From positions 96,658,001 through 96,722,000 of the forward strand of contig JAGIQG010000009.1 of the NCBI GenBank assembly GCA_024679065.1: a DNA stretch of 64,000 nt. Direction: 5' to 3'. Positions 32,165-63,881 of this stretch are shown here, piece by piece (positions within the stretch are counted from its first letter, which is position 1; every line of letters starts with the position of its first letter). Below the pieces are notes generated by a model. The model was not told the DNA's origin. It saw only the letters and a list, made by a program, of their open reading frames with translations, and made no database searches. The stretch comes from Sphyrna mokarran (lineage: Eukaryota). Position numbers and translations under genes: made by a program.

Positions 32165-33175
32165 GTATCCCTACAATGCAGAAGGAGGCCATTCAGCCCA
32201 TCAAGTTTGCACCGACCACAATCCTACCCAAGCCCTGTTCCCATAACTCCACATATTTACCCTGCTAGTCCCCCTAACATTAAGAGCAATTTAGCACGGT
32301 CAATCAACCTAACCCATAAATCCTTGGACTGTAGGAGGAAACTGGAACACCTGGAGGAAACCCACACAGACATGGATAGAATATGTAAACTCCATAGACA
32401 GTGACCCGGAATTGAACCTGGCACTGTGAGGCAGCAGTGCTAATCACTGTACCACCGTGCCACACTAAATTCACACAGATATACATGCAGATAGTGTGGT
32501 AGAAATGTCTATCATGTTTGCGTGGTTTTCCACTGGGTGCTCCAGTTTCCTTCCAAAGTCCAAAGATGTGCAGGTGGATGGATTGGCCATACTAACTTGT
32601 CCCTTAGTGTACCAAGATATGTGGGTTAGATGAATTAGCTGGGTAAAATACATGGGGTTATAATGATAGGCTCAATGGGATGCTTTGTTGGAAAGTTGGT
32701 ACAGACTCAATAGAACAAATGGCCTCCTTCTGCACTGTGTGAACATGTCTATCAGTGCAACAGTTTTTTTTAATGATTTATCTATATTAATGCTTTTATT
32801 TCTCTGTGGACATTTCTACCACACTATGTATGTCTGAGTGAATATCTATGTCCTCTATGGACAGTACAGTGGCACAGTGGTTATCTCTGCTGCCTCACAG
32901 TTCCAGGGACCTGGGTTTGATTCTCAGCTTGTGTCACTGTCTGTGTGGAGTTTGCACATTCTCCCTGCGTCGGCATGGGTTTCCTTTGATTGCTTAGGTT
33001 TCCTCCCATGGTCCAAAGATGCGCGGGTTAAGTGGATTGGCCATGCTAAACTGTCTCTCAGTATCGAGGGATTAGCAGGGTAAGTATGTGAAGTTGCGGG
33101 AATAGAGCTTGGGTGGGAATGTTGCCAACGCAGACTCAATGGGCCGAATGGCTGTTCTATGTCATGAGACTGTGA
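32165..33175. mobile_element. Cluster of three HE1-type SINEs (-, +, +)
   Basis: Consensus matches at about 32165-32463, 32490-32742 and 32868-33175. Confidence 0.85.
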
Positions 33176-37376: not shown

Positions 37377-37536
37377 GTAGCAGCAACAAATCTAACCTGG
37401 TCAATTCCTACCCCATCAGTCTCCTCGCGGACGTTAGCAAAGTAAAGAGAGGGATCATAACAAGTAGCGCTTGCTCGGCAATAAGCTGCTCATTCAGGCT
37501 CAGTTTGGGTTCTACCAAAAGCACTCAGTTCCTGAC
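37234..37536. repeat. Inverted repeat with about 143-bp arms and a 17-bp spacer
   Basis: 37234-37376 is the reverse complement of 37394-37536 with scattered mismatches. Confidence 0.92.
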
Positions 37537-37637
37537 TGTAACCTTCTCTGCTTATCCAGGTTTATTATTTGCACTGGTGCAACATTTTTCACAGCATTCT
37601 GGGATTACAAAGACTTCATTTTTCACAACATTGTGGC

Positions 37638-37970
37638 TGGCACGGTGGTGCAGTGGTTAGCACTGCTGCCTCACAGCACCAGGGACCCAATTTCAATTCC
37701 TGGTTTTGTCTGTGCAGTTTGCATGTTCTCCCCATCTCTACATGGGTTTCCTCCAGGTGCTCTAGTTTCCTCCCGTAGTCCAAAGATGTGGGGGGTTAGT
37801 TGCATTGGCCATGCTAAATTGCCCCTTCGTGTCCTGAGATGAGTAGGTTCTAGGGATTAGCAGGGTAAATGTGTGGGATAGTGGGAAGAGGGGCTGGGAT
37901 GGGATTGTTATTGGTGCAGACTTGATGAGCCGAATGGCCTCCTTCTGCATTGTAGGGTTTCTATGATTCT
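37638..37970 (+). mobile_element. HE1-type SINE just upstream of the leader exon
   Basis: Consensus match. Confidence 0.9.
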
Positions 37971-38101
37971 GCTTCTTGTGTTTTGCCCTTTTTTTGCACT
38001 GCCAGTTTTTATCCTTCGCATTGCAATGACCTTTCTGTTTGCTAATTTTGAGTGTTAACTTCATGTCTTATGTACTTCCTTTCTCCACTTTCTACAGGAA
38101 A

Positions 38102-38144
38102 ATGAACATAAGTCCCATCCTCTGGATTTTGGCTGCCTTCTGGG
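38102..38144 (+). CDS. Signal-peptide exon MNISPILWILAAFW(G); exon begins at 38098
   Basis: Polypyrimidine tract and acceptor cttcctttctccactttctacag (ends 38097), ATG 38102, hydrophobic core, phase-1 donor G|gtaagt. Joins to GINA-EKF of the V exons to complete a leader. Confidence 0.88.
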
Positions 38145-41100
38145 GTAAGTGGGCATTTCCTTACGCTGCAAATCTGTCCCAGGCAATGGTGCAGAAGTGG
38201 ATAACAGTGACTGGGCAATGGGAAAGCAAAATGTCTCTTGTTTTACCTTGCTGTTGCTTGCTCTGCCACACATCACCTTACCCTGCACTCCCCCTGCTGT
38301 TGCTGATCGATCAAACTGTTTGTGTAACACTCTGTGCTGGATGGGCAGAAATCTCTCCTTTATTCTGAGGACTGAAGCTATTGCAGTCAGGATCCCGCCT
38401 CCCACTCCTCCCTCCCCTCTGTCATTGATAACCCAGAGTGTCTACTGGAGCTGGCACCTTCTGGACAAGTAGCAACTACAGATTCAGTATCCTGTTTCTT
38501 ATCAAATAACTCCAATCCTGCAAGTTTCTTGAGGTTCATGGAATCAAAGAATCCCTACAGTGCAGAAGAGGCCATTTGGCCCATCGAGTCTGCACCGATC
38601 ACAATCCCAATCAGGCCCTACTTCCACAATCCCACTTATTTACCCTGCACCAATCTCCTGACACTAAGGGGCAATTTACCGTGGCCAATCAACCTAACCC
38701 ACACATCTTTGGATGTGCAAGGAAATCGGGGCGCCCACACGCAGACATGGGGAGAATGTGCAAACGCCACCCAGACAGTGACCCAAGGTCAGAATTGAAC
38801 CCGGTGCCTGGTACTGTGAAGCAAGAAATCTGACTACTGTGTCACTGTGCCACCCAAATTGACTCTCTGACAGAGTATCTTACCCAGGCCTTATCCCCTG
38901 CTCTATCCTGGTGATCCCAGAATTTACTATGATTAATCCCATCTAACCTACACATTATGAGTGATTGAAGGACAATTTAGCATAACTAATCCACCTAATT
39001 TGCACATCTTTGGACTGTGGGAGGAAACCAAAGCACCCAGAGGAAACCCACACAGACACAGAGAGCATGTGCAAACTCCACACAGACAGCGACCCAAGGT
39101 TGGAATCAAACCCTAGTCCCTGGCATCGTGAGGCAGCAGTGTTAACCATTGTGCCACCGTGTTGCTCAAATGGCCTTATTCTGCTCTGCCTCACAATGCC
39201 TCCATTATGTCACAGCTCCTGTCTGTTCAATGTTAAAAGGTGTAAATATAAACACAGGATGATATTACTGTCCGTTGGTCGACATTTGCCAATTAGATTC
39301 TGTCCAAATGCATAACTGAATAGGACTACATTGAATGTACATCACAGAAAGAGGCAAAGGGATTCACACACTCCATTCATTTGGTTATGCCCCAGCCAAA
39401 CATCCACTCTTCTCTCTTCATGTCCCCTTTAATTATCCTTCTCATGATTTCTTCCTCATGTTTAACTAGGATCCATAATATTCAGCACAAGCACTCTAAG
39501 TGATAGACAGTATCCCACTCCCATCACCCTCTGGATAACTTAGTTTGTCCTGAATCCCTTATTGAATGTATTATTGCCCATTTTATATTCATGCCTCCTA
39601 GTTTGGACTTCCCTAAAAGTGCAAAAAATATTCATTCATCTATCCAGTAAACCTCTTCCATAATCCTGGAGGCATCTATTAGGTCAACCTTGTCTTTTCC
39701 AAAGCTCAATGTTGAGATAATGGTCACCATTTAGAGAATATGCTTAGTTTTCATTCTTCCTGCCAAAATAGACAATTTCACATTGGTCCACATTATATTC
39801 TATTTGCCAAATGTTTGCCCAATCACTTAGATTATCTATGTCCCTTTGTTGCTCCTTATGTCTTCTTCACAATTTATTGCCTATCTCTCTTTGTATTATC
39901 AAATTTAGCAAACATACCTTTTGTGCCTTCATCCAAGTTATTAACAAAACAGGTTGGGGCCGCAGCACTGATCCCTGTGGCACACCACTTGGCACACCCT
40001 GCCAACCAGAAAAAGATCTATTCTCTGTGGTTAACTATCCAATCCATGGCAATAGGTTAGCCCTTGTTGTACAATGTGTGATGTCCAATGTTTTTCTTGT
40101 TATCATAGTTAAAACTTGCATTCCCCTCTAATACCAAAGTCACAGAGGGGTTTAAGATGATTTATTGACACCTGTAGCTACGGAACTCCGATCCAATCTT
40201 TAAGACCAGTCAGAATGCAGAACTGAGAAATGCAGAAGCAATTATTGTTTCAAATTTGATTACAAGTAATTAGCATATATGAATCAAAATATACAATTTT
40301 CTTCTGTCCACTCATGGTTATTGATTAATGTTACATCATGTATAAAGTACAGATATTAAAACCAATCACAATCACCTTACGTTTGCTTAATTATAATATC
40401 CAATTAGCGTGAGGTTTTTCATTGCATCAATAGGGTATCGTTCCAACTATCTTTAGACATTTTAGCAGTATCTGAATGTTAGGACATAAATCACCCCACT
40501 ATCTACTTTAATGGCCTCTCCCCAGACCAAGATTCCCTATCTTACCTGAAAGGTAATTGTTCTATGTAAAACAGATTAGTACCCTAACGTGGATGTCTCT
40601 GCTGAAAACTGCATGCAAGCTATATATTTTTTTGTTTTTAATGCTTTCAGTAGCTATTTCCCAATATGGAATAACTACTACTTTCTTACATAATTATTAG
40701 TATGAGTATTATTCCCTCTCAGCCTTTATGTTATGAGTTTCGATTTTCCACAATAACTTTTGATGTGGCACCCTAATAAATGCCTTCTGGAAATCCAAGA
40801 ACAGCACATTCACTAGTTCCCCTTTATCCAGAGTGCTTACCGTAAAACAGTAATGCTTTTCTCTCTTTTATCCAGGAATTAACGCTGAAAAGTTCAGCGT
40901 TATTCAAGAGCACCCCACAATTTTGGCAATGGTGGGAGAAGATGTGTTCATTCCTTGTACCTTCACAGCCAACATCCAGAGTAAGATATGGTCTTACACA
41001 TGGTACAAGGATGGCAGAAATGGCATTAAGGTTTCCAATGAGTCTGTAGAATACAGAGGACGGATCAACAGGCCCAAAGAAGATAATTTGCAAGATGTCT

Positions 41101-44100
41101 CCATTGTAATAAGAGATGTGAGAGTGAATGATTCCGGGATCTATTACTGCAAAGTGTATATTATGCCACTGGGTGAGGAATATGGAGCAGGAACACAACT
41201 CACAGTGAGAGGTAAGTAACTCGACAATCTGAGGGATGAGTGACAGAGGGGGGAATTCAGTGCCACAGTCTGCTCGTGAGATCTGTGACTGACACCACTG
41301 CCAGACTGGGGAATACAAAAAACAGAAATAACTAATCATAAACTTCTTACGGTGCTGAAAGAAGCCATTTGATCCATCATGTCTTTACCGGTTCTCCCAA
41401 TTTCTCTTCATATCCCCATTCAATGTATCCTTCTCATGCTTTCTGCCTCATATTTAACCAGCATCCATGATATTCAGCACAAGTACTCTAGGTGGTAGAC
41501 AGTACTCCAATCCCATCATCCTCTAGATAAATTAGTTTGTCCTGAATTCTTTATTGAATGTGTTATTGCCTGTTTTATATTCATAGCTCCTCGTTTGGAC
41601 TTCCCTAAAAGTGCAAAATATATTCATTTCATCTATTCAGTAAACTTCTTTCATAATCCTAGAGGCATCTATTAGATCAGCTTTGTCTTTTCGAATGCTC
41701 AATGCTGGAACAGTGGTCACCATTTAGAGAATATGCTTAGCTTACATCCTTCCTGCCAAAATTGGCAATTTCACATGTGCCCACATTATATTCTATTTGC
41801 CAATTGTTTGCCCCATCACTTAGATTATCTATGTCCCTTTGTGGTTTCCTTATGTCCTCTTCGCAATTTACTTTCCTACCTAGTTTGCATTATCAAATTT
41901 AGCAACCATACCTTTAAGTCCAGTCAGAATGCAGAATTGAGAAATGCAGAAGCAATTATAGTTTCAAATTTGATTACAAGTAATTAGCATATACCAATCA
42001 AAATATAGGATTTACTTCTGTCCACTCATGGTTATTGATTAATGTTACATCATGTATAAAGTACAGATATTAAAACCAATCACAATCACCTTACGTTTGC
42101 TTAATTATAATATCCAATTAGCGTGAGGTTTTTCATTGCATCAATAGGGTATCATTCCAACTATCTTTAGACATTTTAGCAGTGTCTGAATGTCAGGACA
42201 TAAATCATCCCACTATCTACTTTAATGGCCTCTCCCCAGACCAAGATTCAGTATCTTACCTGAAAGGTAATTGTTCTATGTAAAACAGAGTAGTACCCTA
42301 ACGTGGATGTCTCTGCTGAAAACTGCATGCAAGCTATTTTGTTTTTTGTTTTTCATGCTTTCACTAGCCATTTACCAATAGGGAACAACTACTACTCTCT
42401 TCCATAATTATTATGAGTATGAGTATTAATCCCCCTCAGCCTCTATGTTATGAGTTTCCATTTTCTACAATAACTTTTGATGTGGCACCCTAATAAATGC
42501 TTTCTGGAAATCCAAGAACAGCACGTCCACTGGTTCCCCTTTATCCAGAGTGCTTAGTGTAACACAGTAATGCTTTTCTCTCTTTTTTCCAGGAATTAAC
42601 GCTGAAAAGTTCAGCGTTATTCAAGAGCAACCCACGATTTTGGCAACGGTAGGAGAAGATGTGTTCATTTCTTGTACCTTCACAGCCAACATCCAGAGTA
42701 AGATATGGTCTTACACATGGTACAAGGATGGCAGAAATGGCACTAAAATTTCCAATGAGACTGAAGAATACAGAGGACGGATCTACAAGTCCATTTTACG
42801 AGATGCCTCCATTGTAATAAGAGACGTGAGAGTGAATGATTCCGGGGTCTATTACTGCAAAGTATATATTATGCCACTGGGTGAGGAATATGGAGCAGGG
42901 ACACAGCTCACAGTGAGAGGTAAGTGACTCGACAATCTGAGATATCGGGTGATTGACAGGGGTGCGGCGGGGTGGCGAATTCAGCACCACAGTTCATTAA
43001 TGGGATCTGTGACTGACGCTACTGCCAGGCTGGGGAATACGAAAAATAGAAATAACTGATCATAAACTTCTTACGGTGCTGAAAGAAACCATTTGATCCA
43101 TCATGTCTTTACCGGTTCTCCCAATTTCTCTTCATATCCCCATTCAATGTATCCTTCTCATGCTTTCTGCCTCATATTTAACCAGCATCCATGATATTCA
43201 GCACAAGTACTCTAGGTGGTAGACAGTACTCCAATCCCATCACCCTCTAGATAAATTAGTTTGTCCTGAATTCTTTATTGAATGTGTTATTGCCCATTTT
43301 ATATTCATGGCTCCTCGTTTGGACTTCCCTAAAAGTGCAAAATATATTCATTTCATCTATTCAGTAAACTTCTTTCATAATCCTAGAGGCATCTATTAGG
43401 TCAGCCTTGTCTTTTCGAATGCTCAATGCTGGAACAGTGGTCACCATTTAGAGAATACGCTTAGCTTACATCCTTCCTGCCAAAATTGGCAATTTCACAT
43501 ATGCCCACATTATATTCTATTTGCCAATTGTTTGCCCAATCACTTAGATTATCTATGTCCCTTTGTGGCCTCCTTATGTCATCTTCACAATTTACTTTCC
43601 TACCTATCTTTCCATTATCAAATTTAGCAACCATACCTTTTGTACCTTCATCCAAGTTATTAATAAAACAGGTTGGGACCACAGCACTGATCCATGTGGC
43701 ACACCACTTGGCATATCCTGCCAACCAGAAAAAGATCACCTTTCTGTAGTTAACTATCCAATCCATGGCAATAGGTTAGCCCTATTATATCCCTGTTATA
43801 CGATGTGTGATGTCCAATGCTTTCTTGTTATCATAGTTAAAACTGTCATTCCCCTTTAATAGCCAGAGAAAGTCACGGAGTGGTTTAAGATGATTTATTG
43901 ATACCTGTAGCTACGAGACTCTGATCCAATCTTTAAGACCAGTCAGAATGCAGAATTGTGAAATGCAGAAGCAATTATAGTTTCAAATTTGATTACAAGT
44001 AATTAGCATATACCAATCAAAATATACGATTTACTTCTGTCCACTCATGGTTATTGATTAATGTTACATCATGTATAAAGTACAGATATTAAAACCAATC

Positions 44101-47100
44101 ACAATCACCTTACGTTTGCTTAATTATAATATCCAATTAGCATGAGGTTTTTCATTGCATCAATAGGGTATCATTCCAACTATCTTTAGACATTTTAGCA
44201 GTGTCTGAATGTTAGGACATAAATCATCCCACTATCTACTGTAATGGTCTCTCCCCAGACCAAGATTTCCTATCTTACCTGAAAGGTAGTTGTTCTATGT
44301 AAAACAGCTTAGTATCCTAACATGGATGTCTCTGCTGAAAACTGCATGCAAGCTATATTTTTTGTTTTTAATGCTTTCACTAGCCATTTACCAATGTGGA
44401 ATAACTACTACTCTCTTCCATAATTATTAGTATGAGTATTATTCCCTCTCAGCCTTTATGTTATGAGTTTCCATTTTCCACAATAACTGTTGATGTGGCA
44501 CCCTAACAAATGCCTTCTGGAAATCCAAGTACAACACATCGATCAGTTCCCCTTTATCTATAGTGCTTACTGTAGCTTTTCTCTCTTCTTTCCAGGAATT
44601 AATGCTAAAAAGTTCAGCGTTATTCAAGAGCACCCCACAATTTTGGCAAAGGTGGGAGAAGATGTGTCCATCCCTTGTATCTTCATAGCCAACATCCAGA
44701 GCAAGATATGGTCTTATGCATGGTACAAGGATGGCAGAAATGGCACTAAGATTTCTAATTTTACTGGAGAATACAGAGGACGGATCTACAAAGAGGATAT
44801 TTTGCGAGATGCCTCCATTATAATAAGAGATGTCAGAGTGAATGATTCCGGGATCTATTACTGCAAAGTGTATATTATGCCACTGGGTGAGGAATATGGA
44901 GCAAGAACACAGCTCACAGTGGAAGGTAAGTGAGTCAACAATCTGAGGTATTGGATGAGCGACGGGGGTGGGGGGGGAGAGGAATTCAGCACCACAGTTC
45001 ACTAATGGGATCTGTGATTGGCGCCACTGCCAGGCTGGGGAGTGCCAAAGACAGAAACTCACTCAGCTACGGAGAAGAGAATATTGAACCATCTGAAATA
45101 ACTGATCACAGAATTGTTACAATGCAGAAGGAAGCCATTTGGCCCATCATGTCTTTACCGGCTCTCCCAATGAGCATCATGACTGAGTGCCATTTCCCTG
45201 CCGATTCCTCTGTACCCCTGCACATTGTTTCTATGCAAATAATCATCCAATGCCCTCTTAAATGCCTCAATTGGTCCTGCCTCCAGCACATTTCTAGGCA
45301 ACCCATTCTGTTCGCTACATGTGCTGATGTGGAAAAGTTTGTTCTCACATCGCATTTGCTTCTTTTACAAATCTCTTGAAACCTGTGCCCTCTTACTCTT
45401 CATCCTTTTATGAGCTGGTACAGTTTTGCCCAATTTACTCTACCCATCCCCTTCATGATTTTGAACATCTCTGTCCAATCTCCTCTCAGCCTTCTTCTCT
45501 CCAAGAGATCAGTCCCAATCTCTCCAATCTGATCTCATTAGTGAAGTTTCTTATCCCTTGAACTATTATTGTAAACCTCACCTGCTCTCTCTACAGTGCG
45601 TTCTCATCCTTCCTATTATAACGTACCCAAAACTGTGCACAATATTCCTGCTGATATCAAACTAGTGCCTCACATAAGTTCAGTGCAACCTCCTTACTCT
45701 TGTACTGTAATGCTGCTATAAGTAAAGCCAGAATTCTGCATAAATGCAAAGATAAATGCAAAATATTGTGGATGCTCGAATCCAAAACAAAAACAGAAAA
45801 ATGCTGGAAAAGCTCAGCAGGTCTGGCAGCATCTATGGATTGAGGGTAGACCCAATGGCTAGGAATTTATGACCTTGTGCGGGCAAGGCTCGTAAAAATC
45901 CCACCCAAAACCAATGGAGATTCATTCAAAAGTCTGACAACAATAGGAAATGTACTGTTATTGGTGCGACACCGCCTGTTCTATTCATGTTCACCCCGTC
46001 CCCAGTTGTGTTTAAATAGCAGAGGAAGCCACTTGTTAAAATAGCCCATACGTGAAGAACAACTCTGCTAGTTAGTTGTATAGTTACACAATCAGGCATG
46101 TACTGAGAAAGTCAGGTCTCGCTGCACGTTGACGATTTTAGCAATTCTATTCGGGTACTTTTGAATTCCAAATCATTTTTTGTTCAATTTCCAGAAAGAA
46201 AGGCAGAATTCCAAGTTATTCAGAACTTGTTGAATATCCAGACTGTAGAAGGACAGACAGTGGTCATTCCTTGTACTCACACAGCTCTTACCTCTGCTGA
46301 AAAAGTGAGTTTTCAGTGGTACAAGAATGCTAGAAATGGAACAGAAATTTCCAATGAAGCAGCAGAGTACAAAGGGCGGATCTCCATGGTTGGAGAAAAG
46401 GATGGAAGAAACGCTTCCATTCAAATAAGGGACGTGAAATTGAACGATTCAGGGCTGTATTACTGCTGCGTCAAAATGGAGGATCACGTCCCAGAATATG
46501 GAGCAGGAACGCAGCTCATTGTAATGGGTAAGAGATTCACCCGCCTGCGATATCTGAAACTAGCGTAGCATTATTCTGGAGCTGGATAATTGTAATACGC
46601 TGTCTTTCCCCCTTCTGGGAGTGAGTGGGTGAGATGCTCCTTTTCTGCCTCTGGGACTGGGTGGGACAGTGGGTCAGACACTGTCCTTTCCCCCTCTGGG
46701 ACTGGGTGGGACAGCGGGTCAGACACTGTCCTTTCCCCCCTCTGGGACTGGGTGGGACAGCGGGTCAGACACTGTCCTTTCCCCTGCTGGGACTGGGTGG
46801 GACAGAGGGTCAGACACTGTCCTCTGCAATTTGTATAAAAGCTGGGTTCAATGGCAGAGCAGCTGGAGAACCCTTATCAGCGCGTTGAGCAAGTTCTTTC
46901 ACCACTGTCCTGATTACCTGACATTCTGGTTTGTGGAGTCAGGATCATATATTCTATCTCAGAACCTTGCTTGTAATTCAACTGGGAAGAGGATTCTGAA
47001 ATGAATAAAAGTGTAATGTCTAATAACTAATTGAATATACTAGTGAACGATAGCAATTACAGTCTGTTGGACAGACTGGAATACACCAGTGGGGAAGTTA

Positions 47101-50100
47101 CGGTAGAGTCATACGAGGTTTATAGCGTGGAAACAGGCCTTTTAGCCCAATTTGTCCATGCTGCCCTCTCTTTTAAAACCCCTAAGCTAAGCCCAATTGC
47201 CCACATTTGGCCCATATCCCTCTATACCCATCGTACTCATGCAAATATCTAAATGCTTTTTAAAATACAAAATTGTACCTGCCTCTACTACTACCTCTGG
47301 CAGCTTAATTCAGACACTCGCTGCCCTCTGTGTGAAAAGAATTGCCCCTTTGGATATTTTTGTATCTCTCCCCTCTCACTTTAAACTTATGTCCTACCTT
47401 TGGGAAAGGATATAGACTAGCCAACTGATCTGTGCCTCTCATTATTTTACACACCTCTATAAGATCAACCCTCAGCCTCCTACGCTCCAGAGAAAAAAAT
47501 CCCAGTCTATCCAGCCTCTCGTTATAACTCAAAATATTAAGTCCCAGTAGCATCCTAGTAAATTTTTCTGCACTCTTTCTAGTTTAATAATATCCTTTCT
47601 ATAATTGGGTGACCAGAATTGCACACAGCATTCCAAATGTAGCCTTACCAATGTCTTATACAACTTCAGCAAGACGTCCCAAGTCCTGTATTCAATGTTC
47701 TGACCGATGAAACCAAACATGCCGAATGCCGTCTTCGTCAGTCTGTGTACCTGTGACTCCACTTTCAAGAAGCTATAAACATGTACCTCTAGATCTTTTT
47801 GTTCTATAACTCTTCCCTGTTGCCTCAGGCACTGTTTGGATCACATTTGGAGAATTGCACTCAGCTCGAGGCAGGAGAGGGACGATCTGTTGGCTGCGGA
47901 TGGTCACAATCCTGATTCCCCAGAATGAAATTTGGGTTTGATTTCTAAGTTGTTGGAAGGGTTTGGCCCTTACATTGGGAGAAATTGTTCCTTCTGGTGA
48001 GACACGTGTGAGACCTGATTCTGAAACTAGAGATCTGAAATCAAAGAGTTATTTTCACAAAGGAGTGATGGAAACTTGAACTCTTGCCAATAAAGTTGTT
48101 CAAGTGAGGAAAACGGAAACCTTTGAAATAGAGATTTGGTGGGCCACCCCAGGGCAATGATAGGAAGGCACGTGGAATGTTGACAGATTCGTGGAGTTAG
48201 GATTCAACCCCACCATGGCCTTGTTGAACGATGATGTGTTTTTGCAGTGCTGAATGGAGTGGTCATGTTCACTCTGACACAATGCTCCCATCTGACTTGC
48301 TATCCTCTCTCCACAGAGAAAACAAAACCTATAGCAGTTCTGTTGCTAATCCTGTTAGTCAGCACAGTGGTGGAACTGGGTGTCTTTCTCAGCGTTGCAC
48401 TCTACTGTTTGAGGTTACGCAGAGTGAGAGGTAAGAGCATGCATCTTTTGCTGATTTGCAAATATTATGGTTGTGAAATATTGCTGTGGAATTGGATAAT
48501 GATTGAGGTATTCAGTTAACCGCTCTACTGGTATATGAGAGAATGACTGGGGTAATGTATTAGGGTCACCACTTGACCAGGGACACAGTGAAGGTCAGTG
48601 AAAACCGCACCCTAGTTTAAGGGTAATGTGATGATTTGACCGCGTGGATAATGCCTATAAATTTAAGAGTTTTGGAAATGTGCCGATGGGGAATCTATCT
48701 TCAGTTCTGAATGATAGCTAATTTCAGTTAGCTCATGATGTTGGTGATAGTTATTATTATTAATTCCTAGAAGTAAAATCGAATTGACACCTTTTCAGGG
48801 AAATTACAAATGGATTAGAAAGATTACCTTTACAAGCAAGTAACTGAAAGGAAATGCATCCTGAAACAATGCCACACACCGAATGAAATTATGGTAACAC
48901 TCCATAGTTTGTGTGCAACAGGGTAGGAATTTGATCTAGACAAATGATCATTTGAATTAGGAACAAGGATAGACCATTTGGCCTCTTCGGCCTAGTCCAC
49001 CATTCAATAAGATCATGGCCAATCTGGTTGTGGCCTCACTTTGCCCACCTCTTGATAACCTCTGACTGCTCCTAACCCCTCCTTTAATTAAGAATCTATC
49101 AACTTCTGCCTCAGAAGAAACATTGACCTTGTTTCACTGCCATCTGGGAAAGAGAGTTCCACAGATTTGACTTTATCAGAGAAAATAATTCTTCTCGCCT
49201 CTATCTTAATTGGGAGTCCTCTTATTTTTAAATGGTGTCAGCTAGTTCCAATCTCTCTCACAAGGAGAAACAGCTTTTAAGTAGCTGTTAAGTCCCGTTG
49301 AGATCTTCTCTGATTCACCAAGATCACAGCTCAATCTTTTAAACTCCACTGAATATAATACAGCCTGTTCAACCTTTTCTCATAAGGTGTCCCTTCACCC
49401 TCATCCTGTGTATCTGTCAAGTAAATGTCATTTAGGGCGGCACGGTGGCATAGTGGCCAGAGCACTGTTGCCTCACCGTTTAGGGGACGTGGGCTCGATT
49501 CCAGCCTTGGGTCACTCTCTGTGTGAAGTTTGCACATTCGCCCTGTGTCTGCATGAGTTTTCTCTGGGTGCTCCGGTTTCCTCCCACTGTCCAGAAGATG
49601 TACAGGTTAGGTGCATTGGTCATACCAACTTGCCCCTTAGTATCCCTGGTATGTAGGTTAGAGGGATTAGCAGGGTAATATGTGGGGTTACAGGAATAGG
49701 GTCTGGGTGGGATTTTGTCAGTGCCGACTCAATTGGACAAATGGTTTCCTTCTGCACTGTAGGGATTCTATGACTTATATCCTTACTTATTAAGGAGACT
49801 AAAACTATATATAGTATTCTACATGTGATTTCACCACCATCCTCTGCAACTGTAGCAAAATAGCCCTACTTGGATATGTTGTCACTCTTGCAGTAAATTA
49901 CAACTTTCCATTTAACATTGCAACGTTAACACAGAATAGTCAGTATCAGCTGGCTGTCTGTTACAACATTCAGTCATTTTACCTCCTTATTCATTCATGA
50001 GATGTGTGCACCATTGGCAAGGTTGGTATTTATTGCCCATCGCTAATTTATCCTTGAGACAACTGTACGGTTTGTGATGTTATTTCAGAGGGCAGTAACA

Positions 50101-53100: not shown

Positions 53101-56100
53101 GTGAAGAAGGCTTACAGTGTGTTAGTGTTTATTAACAGGAGGTTTGAGTTTAAGAGCTGTGGGGTTATGCTGCAACTATACTGAACATTGGTGAGACCAC
53201 ATTTGGAAATATTGTGTTCAGTTCTGGTCACCTCATTATAAGAAGGATGTGGAAGCATTGGAGAGAGTGCAGAGGAGATTTACCAGGATGCTGCCTGATT
53301 TGGAGGGTAGGTCTTATGAGGAAAGGTGGAGAGAGCTGGGGCTTTTCTCATTGGAGCGGAGGAGGATGAGAGGCAACTTAATCAAGGTTTATAAGATGAT
53401 GAGAGGGATTGACAGAGTGGACGTGCAGAGGCCATTTCCTCGGGTGGGTATTGCTGTTACTAGCAGGCATAACTATAAAGTTCATGGTGAAAAATATAGG
53501 AGGGATGTCCGAGGTAGTTTCTTCATCCAGAGAGCGGTTGGGATGTGGAATAGACTATGTGCTGTGATAGTGGAGTTGGACACTTTAGGAACTTTCAAAC
53601 GGTTGTTGGATAGGCACATGGAGCACTCCAGAATTATAGGGAGGGGATAGCTTGATCTTGGGATTGGACATAGCTCGGCACAACATTGCGGGCCGAAGAG
53701 CCTATACTATACTGTAATGTTCTATGTTCTATGTTTTATGTTTTATGAGTATCTACTCTGCTCACAATACAGTGTTTAGGTCAGGAGATAATATAAAAGC
53801 AGTTTGCCCTTCATGCTAAGGAGTTAATTTCAGCCACAAGTTAGAATTTGAAACAGGGAAAATCATAGAATCCTTACAGTATAGAAGGAGACTATTCGGC
53901 CCATCAAGTCTATATCGACCACAATCCCACCCCTGTCCTATTCCTAGGACCTCTCATATTTACTTTGCTAATTCCCCGATGTGAGAATCACTTTAGCATG
54001 GCCAATCAGCCTAACCCGCACATCTTTGAGCTGTGGGAGGAAACTGGAGCACCCGGATGAAACCTATGCAGACATAGGGAGAACGTGGAAACTCTACACA
54101 GCGACCCGAAGCTGGAATTGAACATGGGTCCCTGGCACTGAGGCAGCAGTGCTAACCACTGCACCCATCATAAATATATCTTTTTGTTTCATTTTTAAAA
54201 ATGAAACAAGCAACATCATTTTGCTTTCACTGGAGCGAAAGAGGTTGAGGGGAGACCTGATAGAAGTCTATAAGGTCATAAGAGGCATGGACAGAGTAGA
54301 TAGTCAGAAGCTTTTACCTCGGGTGGAAGAGTCAATTACTAGGGTGCACAGGTTTAATGTGCGAGGGTTAACTTTTAAAAGAGATATACAAGCAGATTTT
54401 TTGCAGGGTGGTGGGTGCCTGGAACTCGTTGTCAGGGGAGGTAATGGAAGTGGATAGAGTAGTGAATTTTAAGGGGCGTCTTGACAAGTACGTGCATGAG
54501 ATAGGAATAGGGGGATATGGTCCTAGAAGCGTAGGGGGTTTTAGTTAAGATGGGCAGCATGATCGGTGCAGGCTTGGGGGGGGGGGCCAAAGGGCCTGTT
54601 TCTGTGCTGTAATTTTCTTTGTTCTTTATCAGGTAACCTAATTGATTGTGAAATACAACTGAAATAAATTGCGTTAAGATAGACTTTTTTTCTAAATGCA
54701 CTAAGGATCTGCTTCAAGCAGTTTAAAATAAGCACTGATTTCTCTTCCTGTGATTGCTGAAAAAAGCAGCATCATTTATTTAATTTTGGCACAGGAACAG
54801 AGTAGCTTCATCATTGATTTAACTGTTGAGTTTTAAAAACAAGTGTTTGATGCCACTTCTAAAGTGGTTTAAAATGTTGAACCCCAGCTGAAGATATTTT
54901 GCATTGTGACTACTGCTTCCTAACCAGCTCTACACCAATTCCCATTTACAACTGTGTATGAGGGCTATATCTCCCCCCCCCCCTCCCCCCCCCGTATGCT
55001 TTACAGTTAACAACGTAACTCTATTTCAATTCTCCAAAGATATGTGGGTTAGGCTGATTTGCCATGGCAAATTGCCCCTTAGTGCCATGGGGATAGGCAG
55101 GGTAAATATCATTGAATCATAGAATCCCTACAGTACAGAAAGAGGCCACTCAGCCTATCGAGTCTGCACCAACAACAATCTCACCCAGGCCCTACCCCCA
55201 TATCCCTACATATTTTACCCAGTAACCCCTCTAACCTATGCATCTCAGGACACTAAGGGGCAAATTTATTAGCATGGCCAATCAACTTAACTCGCACATC
55301 TTTGGACTGTGGGAGGAAAGTGGGGCACCCAGAGGAAACCCATGCAGACACGAGGAGAATGTGCAAACTCCACACAGACAGTGACCCAAGCCGGGAATCG
55401 AACCAAGGTCCCTGGAGTTGTGAAGCAGCAGTACTAACCACTGTGCTACCATGAGGATAGGGACCTGGCTGGGATCATTGTTGGTGCAGGCTCAATGGGC
55501 CGAATGCCCTCCTTCTGCACTATAGGAGTTCTATGTAACCAGACAAATAAAATCTTGCCATAGATTCAGATTAGACATTTGTAATAAACTTATCGTTTGT
55601 TGCATCAGGGACTAAGGACGCAGTGCACCCAGTCCTTCTTCTTTGCAACCCCCCCAAAAAACTTGTAGCTGAAACCACAGTTCCAGTAAAAGATCTTACC
55701 TTGGAAACTCTTCAAGCTTCTTTGTTTCATTACCTCATTTCTTGTAGTGAAACATGGTGTATTGTCAACCTCAACTCCATCTGCTATTTCCAAAATCTTC
55801 CCCAAAAGTTGCCCACACTAACAGCAGCACAGTATGGTATGGGTTGGCCCAAACCATGGAGAGTGTGACCAGGTCTTTCTCGTGAACCTCCTCTGGAGAA
55901 GCTTCAGAGGAGGTTCACCAGAATGATTTCACGAATGAAAAACTTAATGTATGAGGAGAGTTTGAGGACTCTGGGTCTATAATCAATGGAGCTTAGAAGG
56001 ATGGTGGTGGGGGTGGGAAGAGGGGGGTGAATCTCATTGCAATTTACAGAATATTGAAAGGCTTGGATAGAGTGGACATGAGAAAGGTTATTCCATTCTT

Positions 56101-59100
56101 AAGAGAGACTAGGATCAACCTCAGAATAATAATTGGTGGCACAGTGGTTAGCACTGCTGCCTCATAACATCAGGACCCAGGTTCAATTCCAGCTTCAGGT
56201 CATTGTCTGTGTGAAGTTTGTACTTTCTCTCTGTGTTCATGTGAGTTTCCTCCCGGGGTGCTCTGGTTTCCTCCCACATTCCAAGATGTGCAGTTTAAGT
56301 TGATTAGCTATGCTAAATTGACCCTAGTTTCAGGGGATTGGCAAGGTAAATGTGTGGGGTTATGGGAATAGGGCCTGAATGGGATTGTGGTTGGTCCAAA
56401 CACGACGGGCTGAATGACCTCCTTCTAGAATGTAGGGGTGTCTAGAACTTTATGATAAAGAAATGACTCTTTAGAATCAAGATGAGAATGAATTTCTTTA
56501 GACAGAGGGTGATGAATCTGTGGAATTTATTGCCACAAAATGCTGTGGAGGCCAAGTCATTGAGTATATCTGAGACAGAGATAGATAGGTCCTTGATTAA
56601 TAAGGGGATTAAAGGTAATGGGGAAACAGTGGGAGAATGGGGACTGAGAAACTTATCAGCCATGATCGAATGGACTCGATGGGTTGAATGGCCTAATTCT
56701 TATGGTTTTATGCTGTTCAGTGGGTAGTGGAGCAGCTTCCAGGACAGAAAGCTCTGGTGCAGGGAATGTTTATTACTCTTACTCAGGATCAAATCTGGCA
56801 TCTCCTGGTTCCACATGAGGAAATCATCTAGTATGGCCTACATCTTCCTGAAAAATGAAATATTATGCCCCCCACTTCCTGCACCCCCATGAAAATCTCT
56901 CAAAATTTCCCTTAGACCACCCCTTAATTGCTTTCTCTTTATATGGTGCATGTTTCTTGTACATATTGATTCACTTGGCACAACTGATGATTTTGAAGCG
57001 TTTCTCCATGTCCTGGGATCATGCTGTGCTTTGGCTCATCAATCTCCAGCTTTATTTTATCCAAAGGTTTAAAATGGCAGAATAAAGAGAGCGATATAAT
57101 GGAGGAATTAGTGGGGGCCATACAGGAGGGCAGGGTGAGAGGGAGAAAAGGGTTTGTAGGAGGTACAGTACCATGCAGGGAGGTGTATGAGGGAGATTGG
57201 AACAAGAAGGAGGTATTTAAGGGAGTGATGCACAACACAGAGCACGTGTGAGTAAGGAAAAGTGGTTAGTCCTCCTGCTTCACTGCACCAAGGGACCCGG
57301 GTTCGAGTCCCAGTTTGGGTCATTGTTGGCACATTCTCCCCTTATCTGCGTGGGCTTCCTCTGGGTACTCCGGATTCCTCCTATAGTCCAAAGGTGTGTG
57401 AGTTAGGTGGATTGGCTATGCTAAGTTGCCCCTTCGTGTTGGCAGCGGCAGGGGTGCTAGCTAAGGTAAAATGCACGGGATTATGTGGATAGGGCTTGGG
57501 TGGGATTGTGGTCAGTGCAGACTTGATGGGCCGAATGGCCTAGTTCTGAACTGTAGAGATTCTACTCTATAAATGGATTGATGGAGAGAGTGGTACGAGG
57601 GTTTGTGGTATGTAATACAATTTCCTTTTTTTTTGTTTCCTTGTTCATTAGATCTTCAAAAGGCCCAAAGGTGAGTAATTGTCAGCATGTATGCATCCAT
57701 TATTTGTAAATTCACACCAATAACATTTAAAGAGATTGAAGAAGTTTTCAACCAAAGTTTGGTGGGTTGGGGGAATACAGGGGTTGGAATTCATTGCATG
57801 AAACAGCAATCATGACCAAAACACTCACCACTTCAAAACAAAAGGTAATTGCATGCTTGGTTAGGTGGATTGGTCTTCCTAAATTGTCCCTTGGTGTCCC
57901 AAAGCAAAATAAAAATGCTGGAAAATCTCAGCAGATCTGGTAGCATCTGTAAAAAGAAAAAAGAGATGATGTTTCAAGTCCAGATGACCCTTTGTCAAAA
58001 CTGGTTAGAATTGGGCATGTGGACTCAAAATGTCAGCTCTTTTCTCTCCTTGCAGGTGCTGCCAGACCTGCTGAGATTTTCCAGCATTTTCTCTATTGGT
58101 TTCAGATTCCAGCACCCGCACAAATTTGCTTTTACCCTCATGTGCCAAGTTGTGCAGGTAAAGTGGATTGGGGGTTAAGGAATTCGGGTTGCGGTGGGGC
58201 GGGGGAAGGACGCAGAATCGGGGTTAAGAAGGTTAAATTGTGATTGGGGGGGATGTTGCTGGGTAAGATGCAGAGTCAGTACCTTTTCAATGGGCTGAAT
58301 GACCTCCTTCTGCACTATAGAGATTCTATGCAATTGAGATGGCACAACCTAAAGAGCTGCGGACTGGAGGAGTCAGCTTTAGCTGGATACCTCATTTATA
58401 GCTAGCAGAGACAAGATGGGCTGAATAGTCTGCTTCTGTGCCTTAAAGCTTTCAATGTTTAGCATCTTATGAGAAAATGTGGTTGAGTCTTTTTTGTTAA
58501 TATTCTTCCCTTGCAGACAAAGCACAATTATCCCAGAAAACACTTGCAAGGATGGTAAGTTATATCGGATTTTATGCCGTGGACAAACATTTAAATTTCT
58601 ATAGGGTCATTAGAACCAAAATTGTTCAATTTCAATGGTTTGCTTCAAATGCATTGAAAAGGTTACAATTCAAAATTATGGGTCATGCACTGCAGTTATC
58701 TTAACTCATTTAACTTTCCTTTTGAATTGAACACTTTCACACTTGTCATGGTATACATGTCTTCCCCCTCTGCGTGGTGTGGTTTTTTTTACACCAAGGC
58801 ACCGCTTTTCTCTACTATGTAACATTTTTTTTCATTCATTCATGGGACATTGGCTGGTCAGCATTTGTTGCCCTTGGAGGGCAGTTGAGAGTCAACCACA
58901 CTGCTGTAGCTCTGGAGTCACATGTAGGCCAGACCAGGTAAGGATGGCAGATTTCCTTCACAAAGGACATGAGTGAACCAGACAGGTTTTTCCGAAATCA
59001 GCAATGGTTTTAGGGTCATTGATAGATTCTGAATTCCAGATTTTTTTTTTAATTGAATGCAAATTTGACTTTCTGCCATGGCGAGATTTGAACCCAGGGT

Positions 59101-63240: not shown

Positions 63241-63881
63241 CAGTTTGATTATTGTTGTCATATGCATTAGCATACAGTGAAAAGTATTGCCTCTTGCGCA
63301 GTATACAGATAAAGCATACCATTCATAGAGAAGGAAATGAGAGAGTGCAGAACGTAGTGTTACAGTCATGGCTAAGCTGTAGAGAAAGATCAACTTAATG
63401 TGACATAGGTCCATTCAAAAATCTGACAGCAGCAGGGAAGAAGTTGTTCTTGACTCGATCAGTATGTGACGTAAGACTTTTGTATCTTTTTCCCGACGGA
63501 ACAAGGTGGAAGAGAATGTCTCGGGTGCATGGGGGCCTTAATTATGCTGGCTGCTTTTCTGAGGCAGCGGGAAACGTAGACAGAATGTGTGTGGGTGTGT
63601 GTTATGATTTATCCCATGGTAGGTCATTGAGGAATTCTTTCTTTAGAAAGTGTTGGTCTATATCAATAATTATGTCCTTGGATAAATACTTTACTTTGTG
63701 ACAAGTTAAAGATGGAACTCTATTGAACATGATCCCTTGTGTATGGTCCTGAAATATGTTTCACTTTGTGTGTGATTGTATTACACTTCATTCAAGTATT
63801 CACTGATAGAGCTTTATTTGTTTTCCCCAGGATACAAATGAAGAACAATCGATCTACACGCCTATGGAAAGGTACATCTAG
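38102..63881 (+). CDS. Spliced gene model: type I membrane Ig-superfamily receptor (signal peptide, 4 VJ-type V domains, TM, ITIM-bearing tail), NKp30/NCR3-like; about 580 aa if all exons are used
   Basis: Eleven GT-AG exons with compatible phases: 38102-38144, 40876-41211, 42593-42919, 44596-44925, 46195-46527, 48317-48430, 57652-57670, 58517-58554, 61264-61304, 62697-62807, 63831-63881. The joined frame has no stop until TAG 63879-63881. The extracellular/TM part is well supported, the tail exons moderately. Confidence 0.8.
38540..39162 (-). mobile_element. Two tandem HE1-type SINEs downstream of the leader exon
   Basis: Consensus matches at about 38540-38853 and 38870-39162. Confidence 0.9.
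40876..41211 (+). CDS. V-set Ig domain exon V1 (VJ-type), 336 nt, phase 1-1
   Basis: tccag|GA...G|gtaag. Protein GINAEKFSVIQEHP...IPC...WYK...YRGRI...DSGIYYC...YGAGTQLTVR has the canonical B-strand Cys, C-strand Trp, DxGxYYC and a J-like G strand. Confidence 0.95.
42593..42919 (+). CDS. V-set Ig domain exon V2 (paralogue of V1), 327 nt, phase 1-1
   Basis: ttccag|GA...G|gtaagt; open frame; DSGVYYC...YGAGTQLTVR. Confidence 0.95.
44596..44925 (+). CDS. V-set Ig domain exon V3 (paralogue of V1), 330 nt, phase 1-1
   Basis: ttccag|GA...G|gtaagt; open frame; DSGIYYC...YGARTQLTVE. Confidence 0.95.
46195..46527 (+). CDS. V-set Ig domain exon V4 (divergent, membrane-proximal), 333 nt, phase 1-1
   Basis: tttccag|AA...G|gtaaga; ERKAEFQVIQ...IPC...WYK...YKGRI...DSGLYYCC...YGAGTQLIVM. 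Confidence 0.95.
46649..46824 (+). repeat. 45-46 bp minisatellite, about 4 copies
   Basis: ctgggactgggtgggacag(c/t/a)gggtcagacactgtcctttccccct starts at 46651, 46696, 46742 and 46787. Confidence 0.95.
47105..47815 (-). mobile_element. CR1 3' fragment in the V4-TM intron
   Basis: ORFs 47305-47768 contain HLECCVQFWSP and FSLERRRLR. Confidence 0.9.
48317..48430 (+). CDS. Transmembrane exon EKTKPIAVLLLILLVSTVVELGVFLSVALYCLRLRRVR
   Basis: ctctctccacag| acceptor and G|gtaaga donor, phase 1-1; hydrophobic stretch followed by a basic stop-transfer sequence RLRRVR. Confidence 0.92.
49435..49773 (+). mobile_element. HE1-type SINE; further intronic copies at about 50600-50908 (+), 53862-54165 (-), 55115-55450 (-), 57260-57570 (+), 59655-59910 (-), 60505-60828 (-) and 61875-62065 (-)
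   Basis: Consensus match. Confidence 0.9.
50315..50569. mobile_element. Second, internally deleted copy of the same Penelope-like hairpin element
   Basis: Same termini; inverted arms of about 80 bp; degenerate TSD ending gattattgg on both sides. Confidence 0.8.
51500..53745 (+). mobile_element. CR1 LINE ORF2 remnant with tail, interrupted at 52290-52673
   Basis: KSPGPDGI, GVPQGSMLGP, KFADD and ALERVQRRFTRM; tail ttctatgttctatg. Confidence 0.93.
52290..52673. mobile_element. Penelope-like element remnant forming a hairpin with about 165-bp arms and a 13-bp TSD
   Basis: Inverted arms at about 52330-52494 and 52507-52673; TGTATCATAGAAG is duplicated at 52277-52289 and 52674-52686. Confidence 0.85.
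54225..54615 (+). mobile_element. CR1 3' end
   Basis: SLERKRLRGDLIEVYK. Confidence 0.85.
55900..56710 (+). mobile_element. CR1 3' end interrupted by an HE1-type SINE (about 56135-56440)
   Basis: QRRFTRM and FFRQRVMNLWN remnants. Confidence 0.8.
57652..57670 (+). CDS. Cytoplasmic micro-exon (19 nt) DLQKAQ(R)
   Basis: Long T-rich tract ending ttcattag|, strong donor AAG|gtgagt; phase 1 in, phase 2 out; fits both neighbours. Confidence 0.75.
57903..58135. mobile_element. Short palindromic Penelope-like repeat of a second family; relatives at about 5270-5455, 16005-16135, 20030-20122, 28680-28755, 45755-45840 and 63035-63125
   Basis: aaaatgctggaaaatctcagcag and ctgctgagattttccagcatttt form inverted ends. 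Confidence 0.7.
58517..58554 (+). CDS. Cytoplasmic micro-exon (38 nt) RQSTIIPENTCKD
   Basis: ttcttcccttgcag| and ATG|gtaagt; phase 2 in, phase 1 out. Confidence 0.78.
61264..61304 (+). CDS. Cytoplasmic micro-exon (41 nt) DNITSPQLETEQDL
   Basis: tttgttttgcag| and CTG|gtaatt; phase 1 in, phase 0 out. Confidence 0.75.
62065..62430 (-). mobile_element. CR1 3' fragment
   Basis: ORF 62150-62344 reads DLVKVYKMIRG...TRGHKFKV. Confidence 0.85.
62697..62807 (+). CDS. Cytoplasmic exon SYAGINSHCQIKFQHITENCQNSEIGSSGVCVGDVSI (completes ITIM L|SYAGI); 3' end uncertain
   Basis: tttctactgtttttag| acceptor, phase 0. Donor ATA|gtgaga at 62807 (phase 0) is preferred; alternatives are G|gtgtgt at 62781 (phase 1) or read-through to a TAG near 62824. 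Confidence 0.6.
63177..63238. repeat. (TG)n microsatellite in the last intron
   Basis: Direct inspection. Confidence 0.97.
63242..63585 (-). mobile_element. Rex1/Babar-type LINE 3' end
   Basis: Matches the 815-1160 copy. Confidence 0.8.
63831..63881 (+). CDS. Probable terminal coding exon DTNEEQSIYTPMERYI*
   Basis: tttgttttccccag| acceptor; the phase-0 frame gives an acidic stretch followed by a Tyr motif; ATTAAA at 63943-63948 may be a poly(A) signal. Confidence 0.6.
   Translation, partial: DTNEEQSIYTPMERYI

What the first reader, a model, noticed from the sequence alone, without database searches (positions are those of the whole stretch)
39412..45170. Three interchangeable first-domain cassettes behind one leader: possible mutually exclusive (Dscam-like) V-exon choice
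Seen in sequence: V1, V2 and V3 each begin with GINA(E/K)KF, the C-terminal end of the signal peptide, so each is a copy of the original N-terminal exon. All are phase 1-1 with intact AG/GT sites and open frames. I find only one leader, one V4 and one TM exon. Inference: an ancestral L-Va-Vb-TM gene became L-(Va)x3-Vb-TM. Any subset of the cassettes splices in frame, allowing up to eight ectodomains of 1-4 domains, or three alternative two-domain receptors. That would be splice-based, RAG-independent diversification of an NK-type receptor. The simpler alternative is constitutive inclusion that only lengthens the ectodomain.
Basis: partly seen in the sequence, partly recalled or inferred. Interest (0 to 1): 0.82.

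Follow-up and report, generated by a model that had tools for sequence, protein, structure and literature searches.

The report
Shark NKp30-like receptor, triplicated V exon
This is one shark immune-receptor gene of the NKp30 type whose outermost domain exon has been copied three times in a row, most likely giving a longer four-domain receptor rather than a Dscam-style pick-one system.

Summary
On the + strand lie one leader exon (38102-38144), three tandem V exons (40876-41211, 42593-42919, 44596-44925), a diverged fourth V exon (46195-46527) and one TM exon (48317-48430). All are phase 1-1 with GT-AG sites and open frames.

V1's best solved-structure match is human NKp30/NCR3 (E 2.4e-13). 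A tree of 36 V domains supports the ancestry L-Va-Vb-TM becoming L-(Va)x3-Vb-TM.

Dscam-like exclusive choice is not supported:
- The introns are 1269-1676 nt.
- All donors are U2-type GTAAGT.
- Exon lengths are multiples of three.
- No docking/selector complementarity exceeds shuffled controls.

RefSeq models of relatives string the V domains together: Heterodontus in 3 of 3 isoforms, Carcharodon in 3 of 5. The other 2 Carcharodon isoforms skip one inner V. None has a single V, and none skips the first.

My reading is default inclusion of all four V exons, with cassette skipping possible. Another four-V gene nearby was noted earlier in this scan (s1-886404).

The parts
38102..38144 (+). Leader exon: MNISPILWILAAFW plus the first base of a split Gly codon; donor G|gtaagt, phase 1
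   Evidence: Sequence read. Only leader-like hit in the window, from the leaders of homologues P0003, P0005 and P0154. Donor shown.
40876..41211 (+). V1 exon, 336 nt, VJ-type V-set domain
   Evidence: Pfam V-set E 2.9e-14. Top four PDB rows are NKp30/NCR3, best E 2.4e-13. Translation.
42593..42919 (+). V2 exon, 327 nt, copy of V1 (93.3% nt identity, 305 of 327)
44596..44925 (+). V3 exon, 330 nt, copy of V1 (91.2% nt identity); J-like motif reads YGART instead of YGAGT
46195..46527 (+). V4 exon, 333 nt, old membrane-proximal V type (49-51% aa identity to V1-V3)
   Evidence: Groups with Scyliorhinus domain 2 and Heterodontus domain 3.
48317..48430 (+). Stalk and TM exon, 114 nt, phase 1-1: EKTKPIAVLLLILLVSTVVELGVFLSVALYCLRLRRVR, with a Glu inside the helix
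   Evidence: Aligns to the TM of Carcharodon and Heterodontus models, which keep the Glu.
39413..41402 (+). Repeat unit A (intron part plus V1 plus about 190 nt downstream)
   Evidence: Self-BLAST; alignment
41403..43126 (+). Repeat unit B (V2); lacks about 280 bp present in A and C. Segment 41912-43640 is a 92.75% copy of 40198-41915, which looks like a second, later 1.72-kb duplication.
43127..45171 (+). Repeat unit C (V3); 88.6% identical to unit A over 1951 nt
40193..40493 (+). Intron segment kept unusually alike in all three units (equivalents near 41912-42210 and 43931-44230): 1.7-3.7% differences against 5.5-10.8% in the rest of the upstream intron
   Evidence: Fisher p 9.8e-05, 1.6e-04 and 5.4e-03. 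No Rfam match. Meaning unknown.
40876..40905 (+). Hairpin starting at the first base of the V1 exon (same in V2 at 42593-42622): -13.8 kcal/mol, z -4.0 and -4.4. Weak in V3 (-6.5, z -0.8) and absent in V4.
   Evidence: No compensatory change seen, so there is no covariation support.
63831..63871 (+). Cytoplasmic micro-exon DTNEEQSIYTPME, a Tyr motif shared with shark homologues. Two further candidate tail exons lie at 63712-63745 and 58517-58554. The tail runs past the window end.
   Evidence: tblastn; sequence. Exon phases do not chain from the TM exon, so at least one micro-exon is unfound.

Best explanation
One non-rearranging NKp30/NCR3-like receptor gene of a shark.

Ancestry (inferred from the tree). 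Its ancestral form was leader, distal V (Va), proximal V (Vb), TM and a Tyr-motif tail.

Duplication (shown, bar the order of the two steps). The Va exon with about 1.5 kb of upstream intron was duplicated twice in tandem. The first step gave units A and C. The second was a 1.72-kb step that made B.

Splicing (inferred). All five introns are ordinary long U2-type phase-1 introns with near-identical strong sites, and each exon encodes a whole self-folding domain. The spliceosome should therefore include all four V exons by default. The product would be a pIgR-like string of four V domains on a Glu-bearing TM helix, in which the repeated GINAEKF simply acts as an inter-domain linker. Occasional skipping of an inner cassette may give shorter in-frame isoforms.
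For: Gene anatomy and splice sites.

V-set and NKp30 similarity.

Duplication history.

Tree: V1-V3 form a clade at 100/99; V4 groups with Scyliorhinus d2 and Heterodontus d3 at 96/93.

Relatives' models string V domains:
- Heterodontus: 3 of 3 isoforms have three V.
- Carcharodon LOC121291130: 3 of 5 isoforms have three V.
- Mobula has five V, Hemitrygon three.
- Inner domains in these models also start G(I/S)(D/N/G)(A/S)EKF.

The copies look maintained, moderately:
- Frames are open, and both exon indels (9 and 6 nt) are multiples of three.
- dN/dS is 0.30-0.61, with Fisher p 0.0017 for V2-V3.

No feature that would forbid joint inclusion was found.
Against: - No transcript of this species was seen: no RNA run was listed, so read laying could not be used.
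- The relatives' proteins are automatic RefSeq models whose read support I could not inspect.
- 2 of 5 Carcharodon isoforms skip Vb or Vc, so inclusion is not always complete in this family.
- Evidence for selection is modest. dN/dS is not significantly below 1 for V1-V2 (p 0.068) or V1-V3 (p 0.25). Exon divergence equals intron divergence. An open frame after 22-30 changes has a 0.22-0.33 chance probability.
- V3 has lost the second Gly of the J-like motif.
- A stable hairpin abuts the 3' splice site of V1 and V2 but not V3. It could bias exon use.
Confidence: 0.6

Rival explanations
1. Regulated cassette skipping. V1-V3 are alternative cassette exons used in varying subsets. The gene would then give a set of ectodomains with two to four domains and different C'-C''-D surfaces at appreciable levels.
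For: - Any subset is in frame.
- Carcharodon isoforms X3 (Va+Vc) and X4 (Va+Vb) exist beside the three-V forms.
- V1-V3 differ most in the C'-C''-D stretch, including both indels.
- The exon-start hairpin is strong in V1 and V2 and weak in V3.
- A conserved intron segment sits upstream of each cassette.
Against: - Strong, near-identical splice sites favour inclusion.
- 6 of 8 models in two sharks hold all V domains.
- Junction reads between near-identical exons can be mis-assigned, so X3 and X4 may be artefacts. This is my inference.
- No transcript data here.
Confidence: 0.25
2. Dscam-like mutually exclusive choice. Exactly one of V1-V3 is spliced between leader and V4, possibly clonally, giving three alternative two-domain receptors.
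For: Tandem homologous exons of like length and phase behind one leader. A conserved intron element upstream of each cassette could in principle be a selector.
Against: - Introns between cassettes are 1381 and 1676 nt, so there is no steric block.
- All are GT-AG with GTAAGT donors, so there is no U2/U12 clash.
- Exon lengths are 3n, so joint inclusion causes no frameshift or NMD.
- The best complementarity between the unique L-V1 or V3-V4 intron and the cassette introns scores 27-43, against shuffled means of 31.6-32.9 and maxima of 37-43. No docking site pairs with all three units above chance.
- Each exon is a whole domain, so joint inclusion folds.
- 0 of 8 relatives' isoforms have one V or an L-to-inner-V junction.
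Confidence: 0.04
3. One or two of the copies, V3 first, are decaying pseudo-exons that are skipped or contribute nothing, so the working receptor has fewer than four domains.
For: - V3 has the G-to-R change in the J-like motif and the longest branch, 0.13.
- Exon and intron divergence are alike.
- Open frames could survive by chance with p 0.22-0.33.
Against: - All splice sites are intact.
- Both exon indels are in frame, and the Cys/Trp/YYC core is kept in all three.
- V2-V3 dN/dS is 0.30 with p 0.0017.
Confidence: 0.08
4. Assembly artefact: haplotypes or reads wrongly concatenated into a false triplication.
For: None found. Tandem repeats of 1.7-2 kb are a known difficulty for assemblers (general knowledge).
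Against: - Units differ by 6-10% and by a 280-bp indel.
- There is no N run within 30 kb.
- Multi-V genes of the same family occur in independent assemblies of at least six other elasmobranchs.
Confidence: 0.02

Closest known systems
NKp30 / NCR3 (human; shark NCR3 family of Kinlein et al. 2021, which I could not read)
   Same: Non-rearranging V domain with a germline-joined J-like G-x-G strand. The leader/V split is in phase 1. It is the best solved-structure match to V1. A Stegostoma relative is named 'natural cytotoxicity triggering receptor 3-like' by RefSeq.
   Different: Four V domains instead of one. The TM carries Glu, not the Arg that (recalled) pairs NKp30 with CD3zeta/FcRgamma. The tail is long with Tyr motifs. 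V4's best PDB match is pIgR, with NCR3 at only E 6.9e-08.
RefSeq models of shark and ray relatives (Heterodontus XP_067865770, Carcharodon LOC121291130, Scyliorhinus LOC119975535, Mobula XP_062903898, Hemitrygon XP_072892315)
   Same: Same leader, same V types, same EKTK stalk and Glu-bearing TM (Carcharodon, Heterodontus), and the same SIYTPME tail motif. Two to five V domains in tandem.
   Different: At most 65% identity to V1. The number and type of amplified V differ by species: the proximal type is amplified in Mobula, and there is no proximal type in Carcharodon LOC121291130.
Polymeric Ig receptor and other multi-V receptors
   Same: An ectodomain made of tandem V-type domains, each on its own exon. 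pIgR is the second-best PDB family for V1 and the best for V4.
   Different: No orthology is implied. pIgR domains are old and divergent, whereas here three are recent copies.
Insect Dscam1 variable exon clusters
   Same: Tandem arrays of homologous Ig-coding exons in one gene.
   Different: Dscam choice depends on docking and selector RNA pairing (abstracts of PMC8042237 and PMC6071210, seen in the listing). No such pairing above chance was found here, and joint inclusion here is in frame and structurally harmless.
Ig-domain cassette skipping in vertebrate IgSF receptors (for example CEACAM1 and CD33 isoforms; recalled, not looked up)
   Same: Phase 1-1 domain exons can be dropped in frame, giving receptors with fewer domains. 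Carcharodon X3 and X4 look like this.
   Different: Here the skippable exons are near-identical paralogues, so skipping would change length more than kind.

Membership tests
NCR3/NKp30 family | V-set domain with a germline-joined J-like strand (G-x-G-T-x-L-x-V) in a single exon | tested here: met
   YGAGTQLTV ends V1 and V2, YGAGTQLIV ends V4, and V3 has YGARTQLTV. Pfam V-set E 2e-12 to 3e-14.
NCR3/NKp30 family | Closest sequence similarity to NKp30 among characterised proteins | tested here: met
   For V1, the top 4 PDB rows are NCR3, with best E 2.4e-13. For V4 it is not the top hit: pIgR E 3.3e-13, NCR3 E 6.9e-08.
NCR3/NKp30 family | Single extracellular domain | tested here: not met
   Four V exons lie between the leader and the TM exon.
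NCR3/NKp30 family | Basic (Arg) residue in the TM helix for adaptor pairing (recalled feature of mammalian NKp30) | tested here: not met
   The TM reads LLLILLVSTVVELGVFLSVALYCL: a Glu and no Arg or Lys inside the helix.
NCR3/NKp30 family | MHC linkage and B7H6-type ligand | not testable with these tools
   The window holds no MHC marker that I recognised, and binding needs experiment.
Mutually exclusive exon cluster (Dscam-like) | Neighbouring homologous exons of like length in the same frame | tested here: met
   336, 327 and 330 nt, phase 1-1, 91-93% nt identity.
Mutually exclusive exon cluster (Dscam-like) | A mechanism that forbids joint inclusion: steric block, U2/U12 clash, frameshift/NMD, or competing RNA pairing (PMC5740500, passages read) | tested here: not met
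   Introns are 1269-1676 nt, all donors are GTAAGT with AG acceptors, and exons are 3n. Complementarity is no better than shuffles. That search was ungapped and covered two candidate docking regions only.
Mutually exclusive exon cluster (Dscam-like) | Transcripts carry one and only one exon of the cluster | not testable with these tools
   No RNA run was listed. In relatives, 0 of 8 isoform models have a single V.

The most novel reading that the evidence does not exclude
Elasmobranch NKp30-like genes repeatedly amplify one V exon inside the gene and use the copies as optional cassettes. A single germline gene would then yield several ectodomains that differ in length and in the C'-C''-D face. 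That would be a splice-based, RAG-independent way of varying an NK-type receptor. The exon-start hairpin and the conserved intron segment would tune which cassettes are kept.
Probability: 0.2. Interest if true: 0.75.

Novelty: new member of a known kind. Interest (0 to 1): 0.4.

Why it matters
NKp30 is the one NK receptor traceable across jawed vertebrates, and its V domain is discussed as a relic of the pre-RAG antigen-receptor ancestor (PMC12227049 and PMC10751288, passages read).

Shark relatives of it repeatedly multiply a V exon within the gene: three copies here, two to five V domains in six other species' models. This means the family explores ectodomain length and surface by exon duplication and not only by gene duplication.

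If the cassettes prove optional in transcripts, that would be a modest vertebrate parallel to splice-based receptor variation. If they are always included, this is an ordinary case of domain accretion.

Tried and rejected
RNA evidence. The look-up of sequencing runs on 38000-47000 listed no run and used its only call, so read laying was never called.

I therefore could not compare introns, the hairpin or the conserved segment in other sharks.

A close relative or the window's own product in the protein collections. V1 alone found nothing among proteins of 61-194 aa. The best representative is 65% identical. A search with the 452-aa Heterodontus protein gave 13 proteins, none flagged as encoded by the window.

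Docking/selector pairing.
- A first script using whole-intron duplex folding gave meaningless global duplexes and timed out.
- It was replaced by an ungapped local complementarity scan with 20 dinucleotide shuffles per pair, which showed nothing above chance.
- A 12-nt perfect match between about 90 nt upstream of V2 and the V4 acceptor (I6) is at the chance level. By my arithmetic, about 3 such 12-mers are expected in 10.4 kb.

Extra leaders. There are no further leader-like hits inside the units.

Rfam. There are no matches in 37500-49000 at E up to 0.1.

Literature.
- Searches found no paper describing multi-V NCR3-like receptors or their splicing.
- The key paper (Kinlein et al. 2021, PMC8273117) and two others (PMC3709836, PMC4594805) are not held. 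I know the first only from reference lists and recall, and it may already describe such genes.
- Supplements were not consulted.

Rejected readings. Haplotype artefact is rejected because divergence is too high. Alternative promoters of the protocadherin or sDscam type are rejected because there is only one leader.

Steps left out. I therefore made no whole-ectodomain structure prediction and no full-length protein search.
Full report
**What is there**

The + strand between 38.1 and 48.4 kb carries the 5' part of one receptor gene.

| Exon | Coordinates | Length (nt) | Notes |
|---|---|---|---|
| Leader | 38102-38144 | 43 | MNISPILWILAAFW plus one base |
| V1 | 40876-41211 | 336 | V-set |
| V2 | 42593-42919 | 327 | V-set |
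| V3 | 44596-44925 | 330 | V-set |
| V4 | 46195-46527 | 333 | V-set |
| Stalk/TM | 48317-48430 | 114 | EKTKP, then a helix with an internal Glu |

- Every intron is phase 1.
- Donors are G|gtaagt, or gtaaga after V4. Acceptors are pyrimidine-rich cag or ccag.
- Intron lengths are 2731, 1381, 1676, 1269 and 1789 nt.
- tblastn finds only these four V exons, one leader and one TM exon in the 64 kb.

Tail exons lie 10-15 kb further on and run past the window end:
- a candidate at 58517-58554;
- a candidate at 63712-63745;
- 63831-63871, encoding DTNEEQSIYTPME.

Their phases do not chain from the TM exon, so at least one micro-exon is unfound.

**The repeat**

Self-comparison gives three units: A 39413-41402, B 41403-43126 and C 43127-45171.
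- A and C are 88.6% alike over 1951 nt.
- Segment 40198-41915 is 92.75% like 41912-43640.
- B lacks about 280 bp that A and C share.

I read this as two events: an older duplication giving A and C, then a 1.72-kb tandem step that created B. The order is inference.

Identity along the units is mosaic. B and C are 96-100% alike over their first 400 columns but 83-86% alike downstream of the exon. That suggests later conversion or unequal exchange.

Divergence of 6-10% and the indel rule out a haplotype artefact. The only N run is at 7429-7639.

**What kind of domain**

All four exons match Pfam V-set, with E 2e-12 to 3e-14.
- For V1, the four best solved-structure rows are human NKp30/NCR3 (E 2.4e-13), followed by pIgR.
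- For V4, pIgR leads (E 3.3e-13) and NCR3 follows at E 6.9e-08.
- Each domain ends in a J-like YGAGTQL(T/I)V. V3 has YGART.

**Relatives**

A full HMMER scan with V1 gave 1017 proteins at E up to 0.001 and 13 at E up to 1e-30. The top ones are RefSeq models from sharks and rays.

| Species / model | V domains | Other features seen |
|---|---|---|
| Heterodontus | 3 | same EKTK stalk, Glu-bearing TM, SIYTPM-type tail |
| Carcharodon LOC121291130 | 3 near-identical | same stalk, Glu-bearing TM and tail |
| Carcharodon LOC121291272 | 2 | |
| Scyliorhinus LOC119975535 | 2 | |
| Mobula | 5 and 2 | |
| Hemitrygon | 3 | |
| Hypanus | 2 | |
| Several others | 1 | |

None is more than 65% identical to V1. 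The window's own product is not in these collections.

**Tree**

I built a tree from 36 V domains: 32 cut from 17 relatives plus the window's four. P0001 and three partial domains were left out.
- V1-V3 are one clade (100/99), next to Scyliorhinus domain 1 (89/82, not starred).
- V4 sits with Scyliorhinus domain 2 (96/80) and Heterodontus domain 3 (96/93).

So a distal type (Va) and a proximal type (Vb) are old, and the window's gene is Va x3 plus Vb.

Copies also cluster by species in Carcharodon, Cetorhinus, Heterodontus, Hemitrygon and Mobula. In Mobula the proximal type is the one multiplied. This means either repeated independent amplification or concerted evolution. The mosaic identity seen here fits the latter at least in part.

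**Are the copies maintained?**

- Pairwise dN/dS among V1-V3 is 0.43, 0.61 and 0.30. Fisher p is 0.068, 0.25 and 0.0017.
- Exon and intron divergence do not differ significantly.
- An open frame after 22-30 changes has a chance probability of 0.22-0.33.
- Both exon indels, 9 and 6 nt, are in frame, and all splice sites are intact.

Maintenance is therefore likely but only moderately shown. Differences concentrate in residues 50-73, the C'-C''-D stretch by my reading, as another first-stage note says.

**Testing exclusive choice**

PMC5740500 (passages read) lists the ways joint inclusion is prevented: a U2/U12 clash, a donor-to-branch-point distance under about 50 nt, a frameshift, and competing RNA structures. 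It also notes that exclusive exons usually encode the same embedded part of a fold. Here:
- The introns are over 1.2 kb.
- All sites are U2-type GT-AG.
- Exon lengths are multiples of three.
- Each exon is a whole domain.

An ungapped complementarity scan compared the unique part of the L-V1 intron and the V3-V4 intron with the three cassette introns. Best scores were 27-43, against shuffled means of 31.6-32.9 and maxima of 37-43. No docking site pairs above chance with all three units. The limits of that scan are that it allowed no gaps and covered two docking regions only.

**What the relatives' isoforms say**

- Carcharodon LOC121291130 has five models. X1, X2 and X5 carry Va-Vb-Vc, X3 carries Va-Vc and X4 carries Va-Vb.
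- Heterodontus X1-X3 all carry three V domains and differ only in the tail.
- Across both species, 6 of 8 models include every V, 2 of 8 skip one inner V, 0 of 8 have one V, and 0 of 8 join the leader to an inner V.

These are automatic models. I could not see their read support, and junction reads among near-identical exons can be misplaced (inference).

**Conclusion**

The Dscam-like reading is not supported. My odds are:

| Reading | Odds |
|---|---|
| Default inclusion, giving a four-V ectodomain | about 0.6 |
| Appreciable cassette skipping | about 0.25 |
| Some copies decaying | about 0.08 |
| Strict exclusive choice | about 0.04 |
| Assembly artefact | about 0.02 |

**Novelty**

The gene is a new member of the shark NKp30-like family. 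Its multi-V architecture already appears in unnamed RefSeq models. My searches found no paper on multi-V NCR3-like receptors. However, the main shark NCR3 paper (PMC8273117) was not held and may cover them.

Earlier notes of this scan report another four-V NCR3-like gene with an Arg-bearing TM 24 kb beyond the window (s1-886404) and a paired cluster elsewhere (s1-886394). I could not check either.

Noticed in passing
window 40876-40905 and 42593-42622 (weaker at 44596-44625): A 13-bp hairpin begins at the very first base of the V1 and V2 exons (-13.8 kcal/mol; z -4.0 and -4.4). Two changes weaken it in V3 (-6.5; z -0.8), and V4 has none. It could affect 3' splice-site use. There is no covariation evidence.
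   Followed up: partly
window 40193-40493, with equivalents in units B and C: A 300-bp AT-rich intron segment 400-700 nt upstream of each V exon is 2.5-3 times less diverged than the rest of the intron in all three pairs (Fisher p 1e-4 to 5e-3). It has no Rfam match and no counterpart upstream of V4. The cause could be a conversion tract or a constrained element.
   Followed up: partly
window 48317-48430: The TM helix carries a Glu (VVELG). Carcharodon (VVELG), Heterodontus (AGEIG, AVEVG) and a Stegostoma model (LIELA) keep an acidic residue there, while other family members have Gly or Asn at that place.
   Followed up: partly
window 58517-58554, 63712-63745, 63831-63871: These are cytoplasmic micro-exons. 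In the 63712-63745 exon one frame reads DGTLL and another reads HDPLCM, while homologues read DGNLLESDPLCM in a single frame. The window copy may therefore have a 1-nt shift there, or use other boundaries. Whether SIYTPME is in frame could not be settled.
   Followed up: partly
about 20 places in the window, e.g. 39001-39161, 55294-55453, 32866-33024: A roughly 160-bp SINE-like repeat translates as MCKLHTDSDPRLE.NPGPWHCEAAVLTT. The first 40 or so residues of a Chiloscyllium punctatum RefSeq model (XP_072406317.1, P0163) match this repeat, so that model's N-terminus is probably repeat-derived.
   Followed up: no
window 46648-46823: A 45-nt tandem repeat of 3.9 copies (95% matches) lies in the V4-TM intron.
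   Followed up: no
Carcharodon proteins P0164, P0151, P0153, P0166 and P0167: A 7-residue duplication, GTELTVRGTELTVRG, sits at the Va-Vb junction of all five isoform models. It is either a small tandem duplication at the exon end or a modelling quirk.
   Followed up: no
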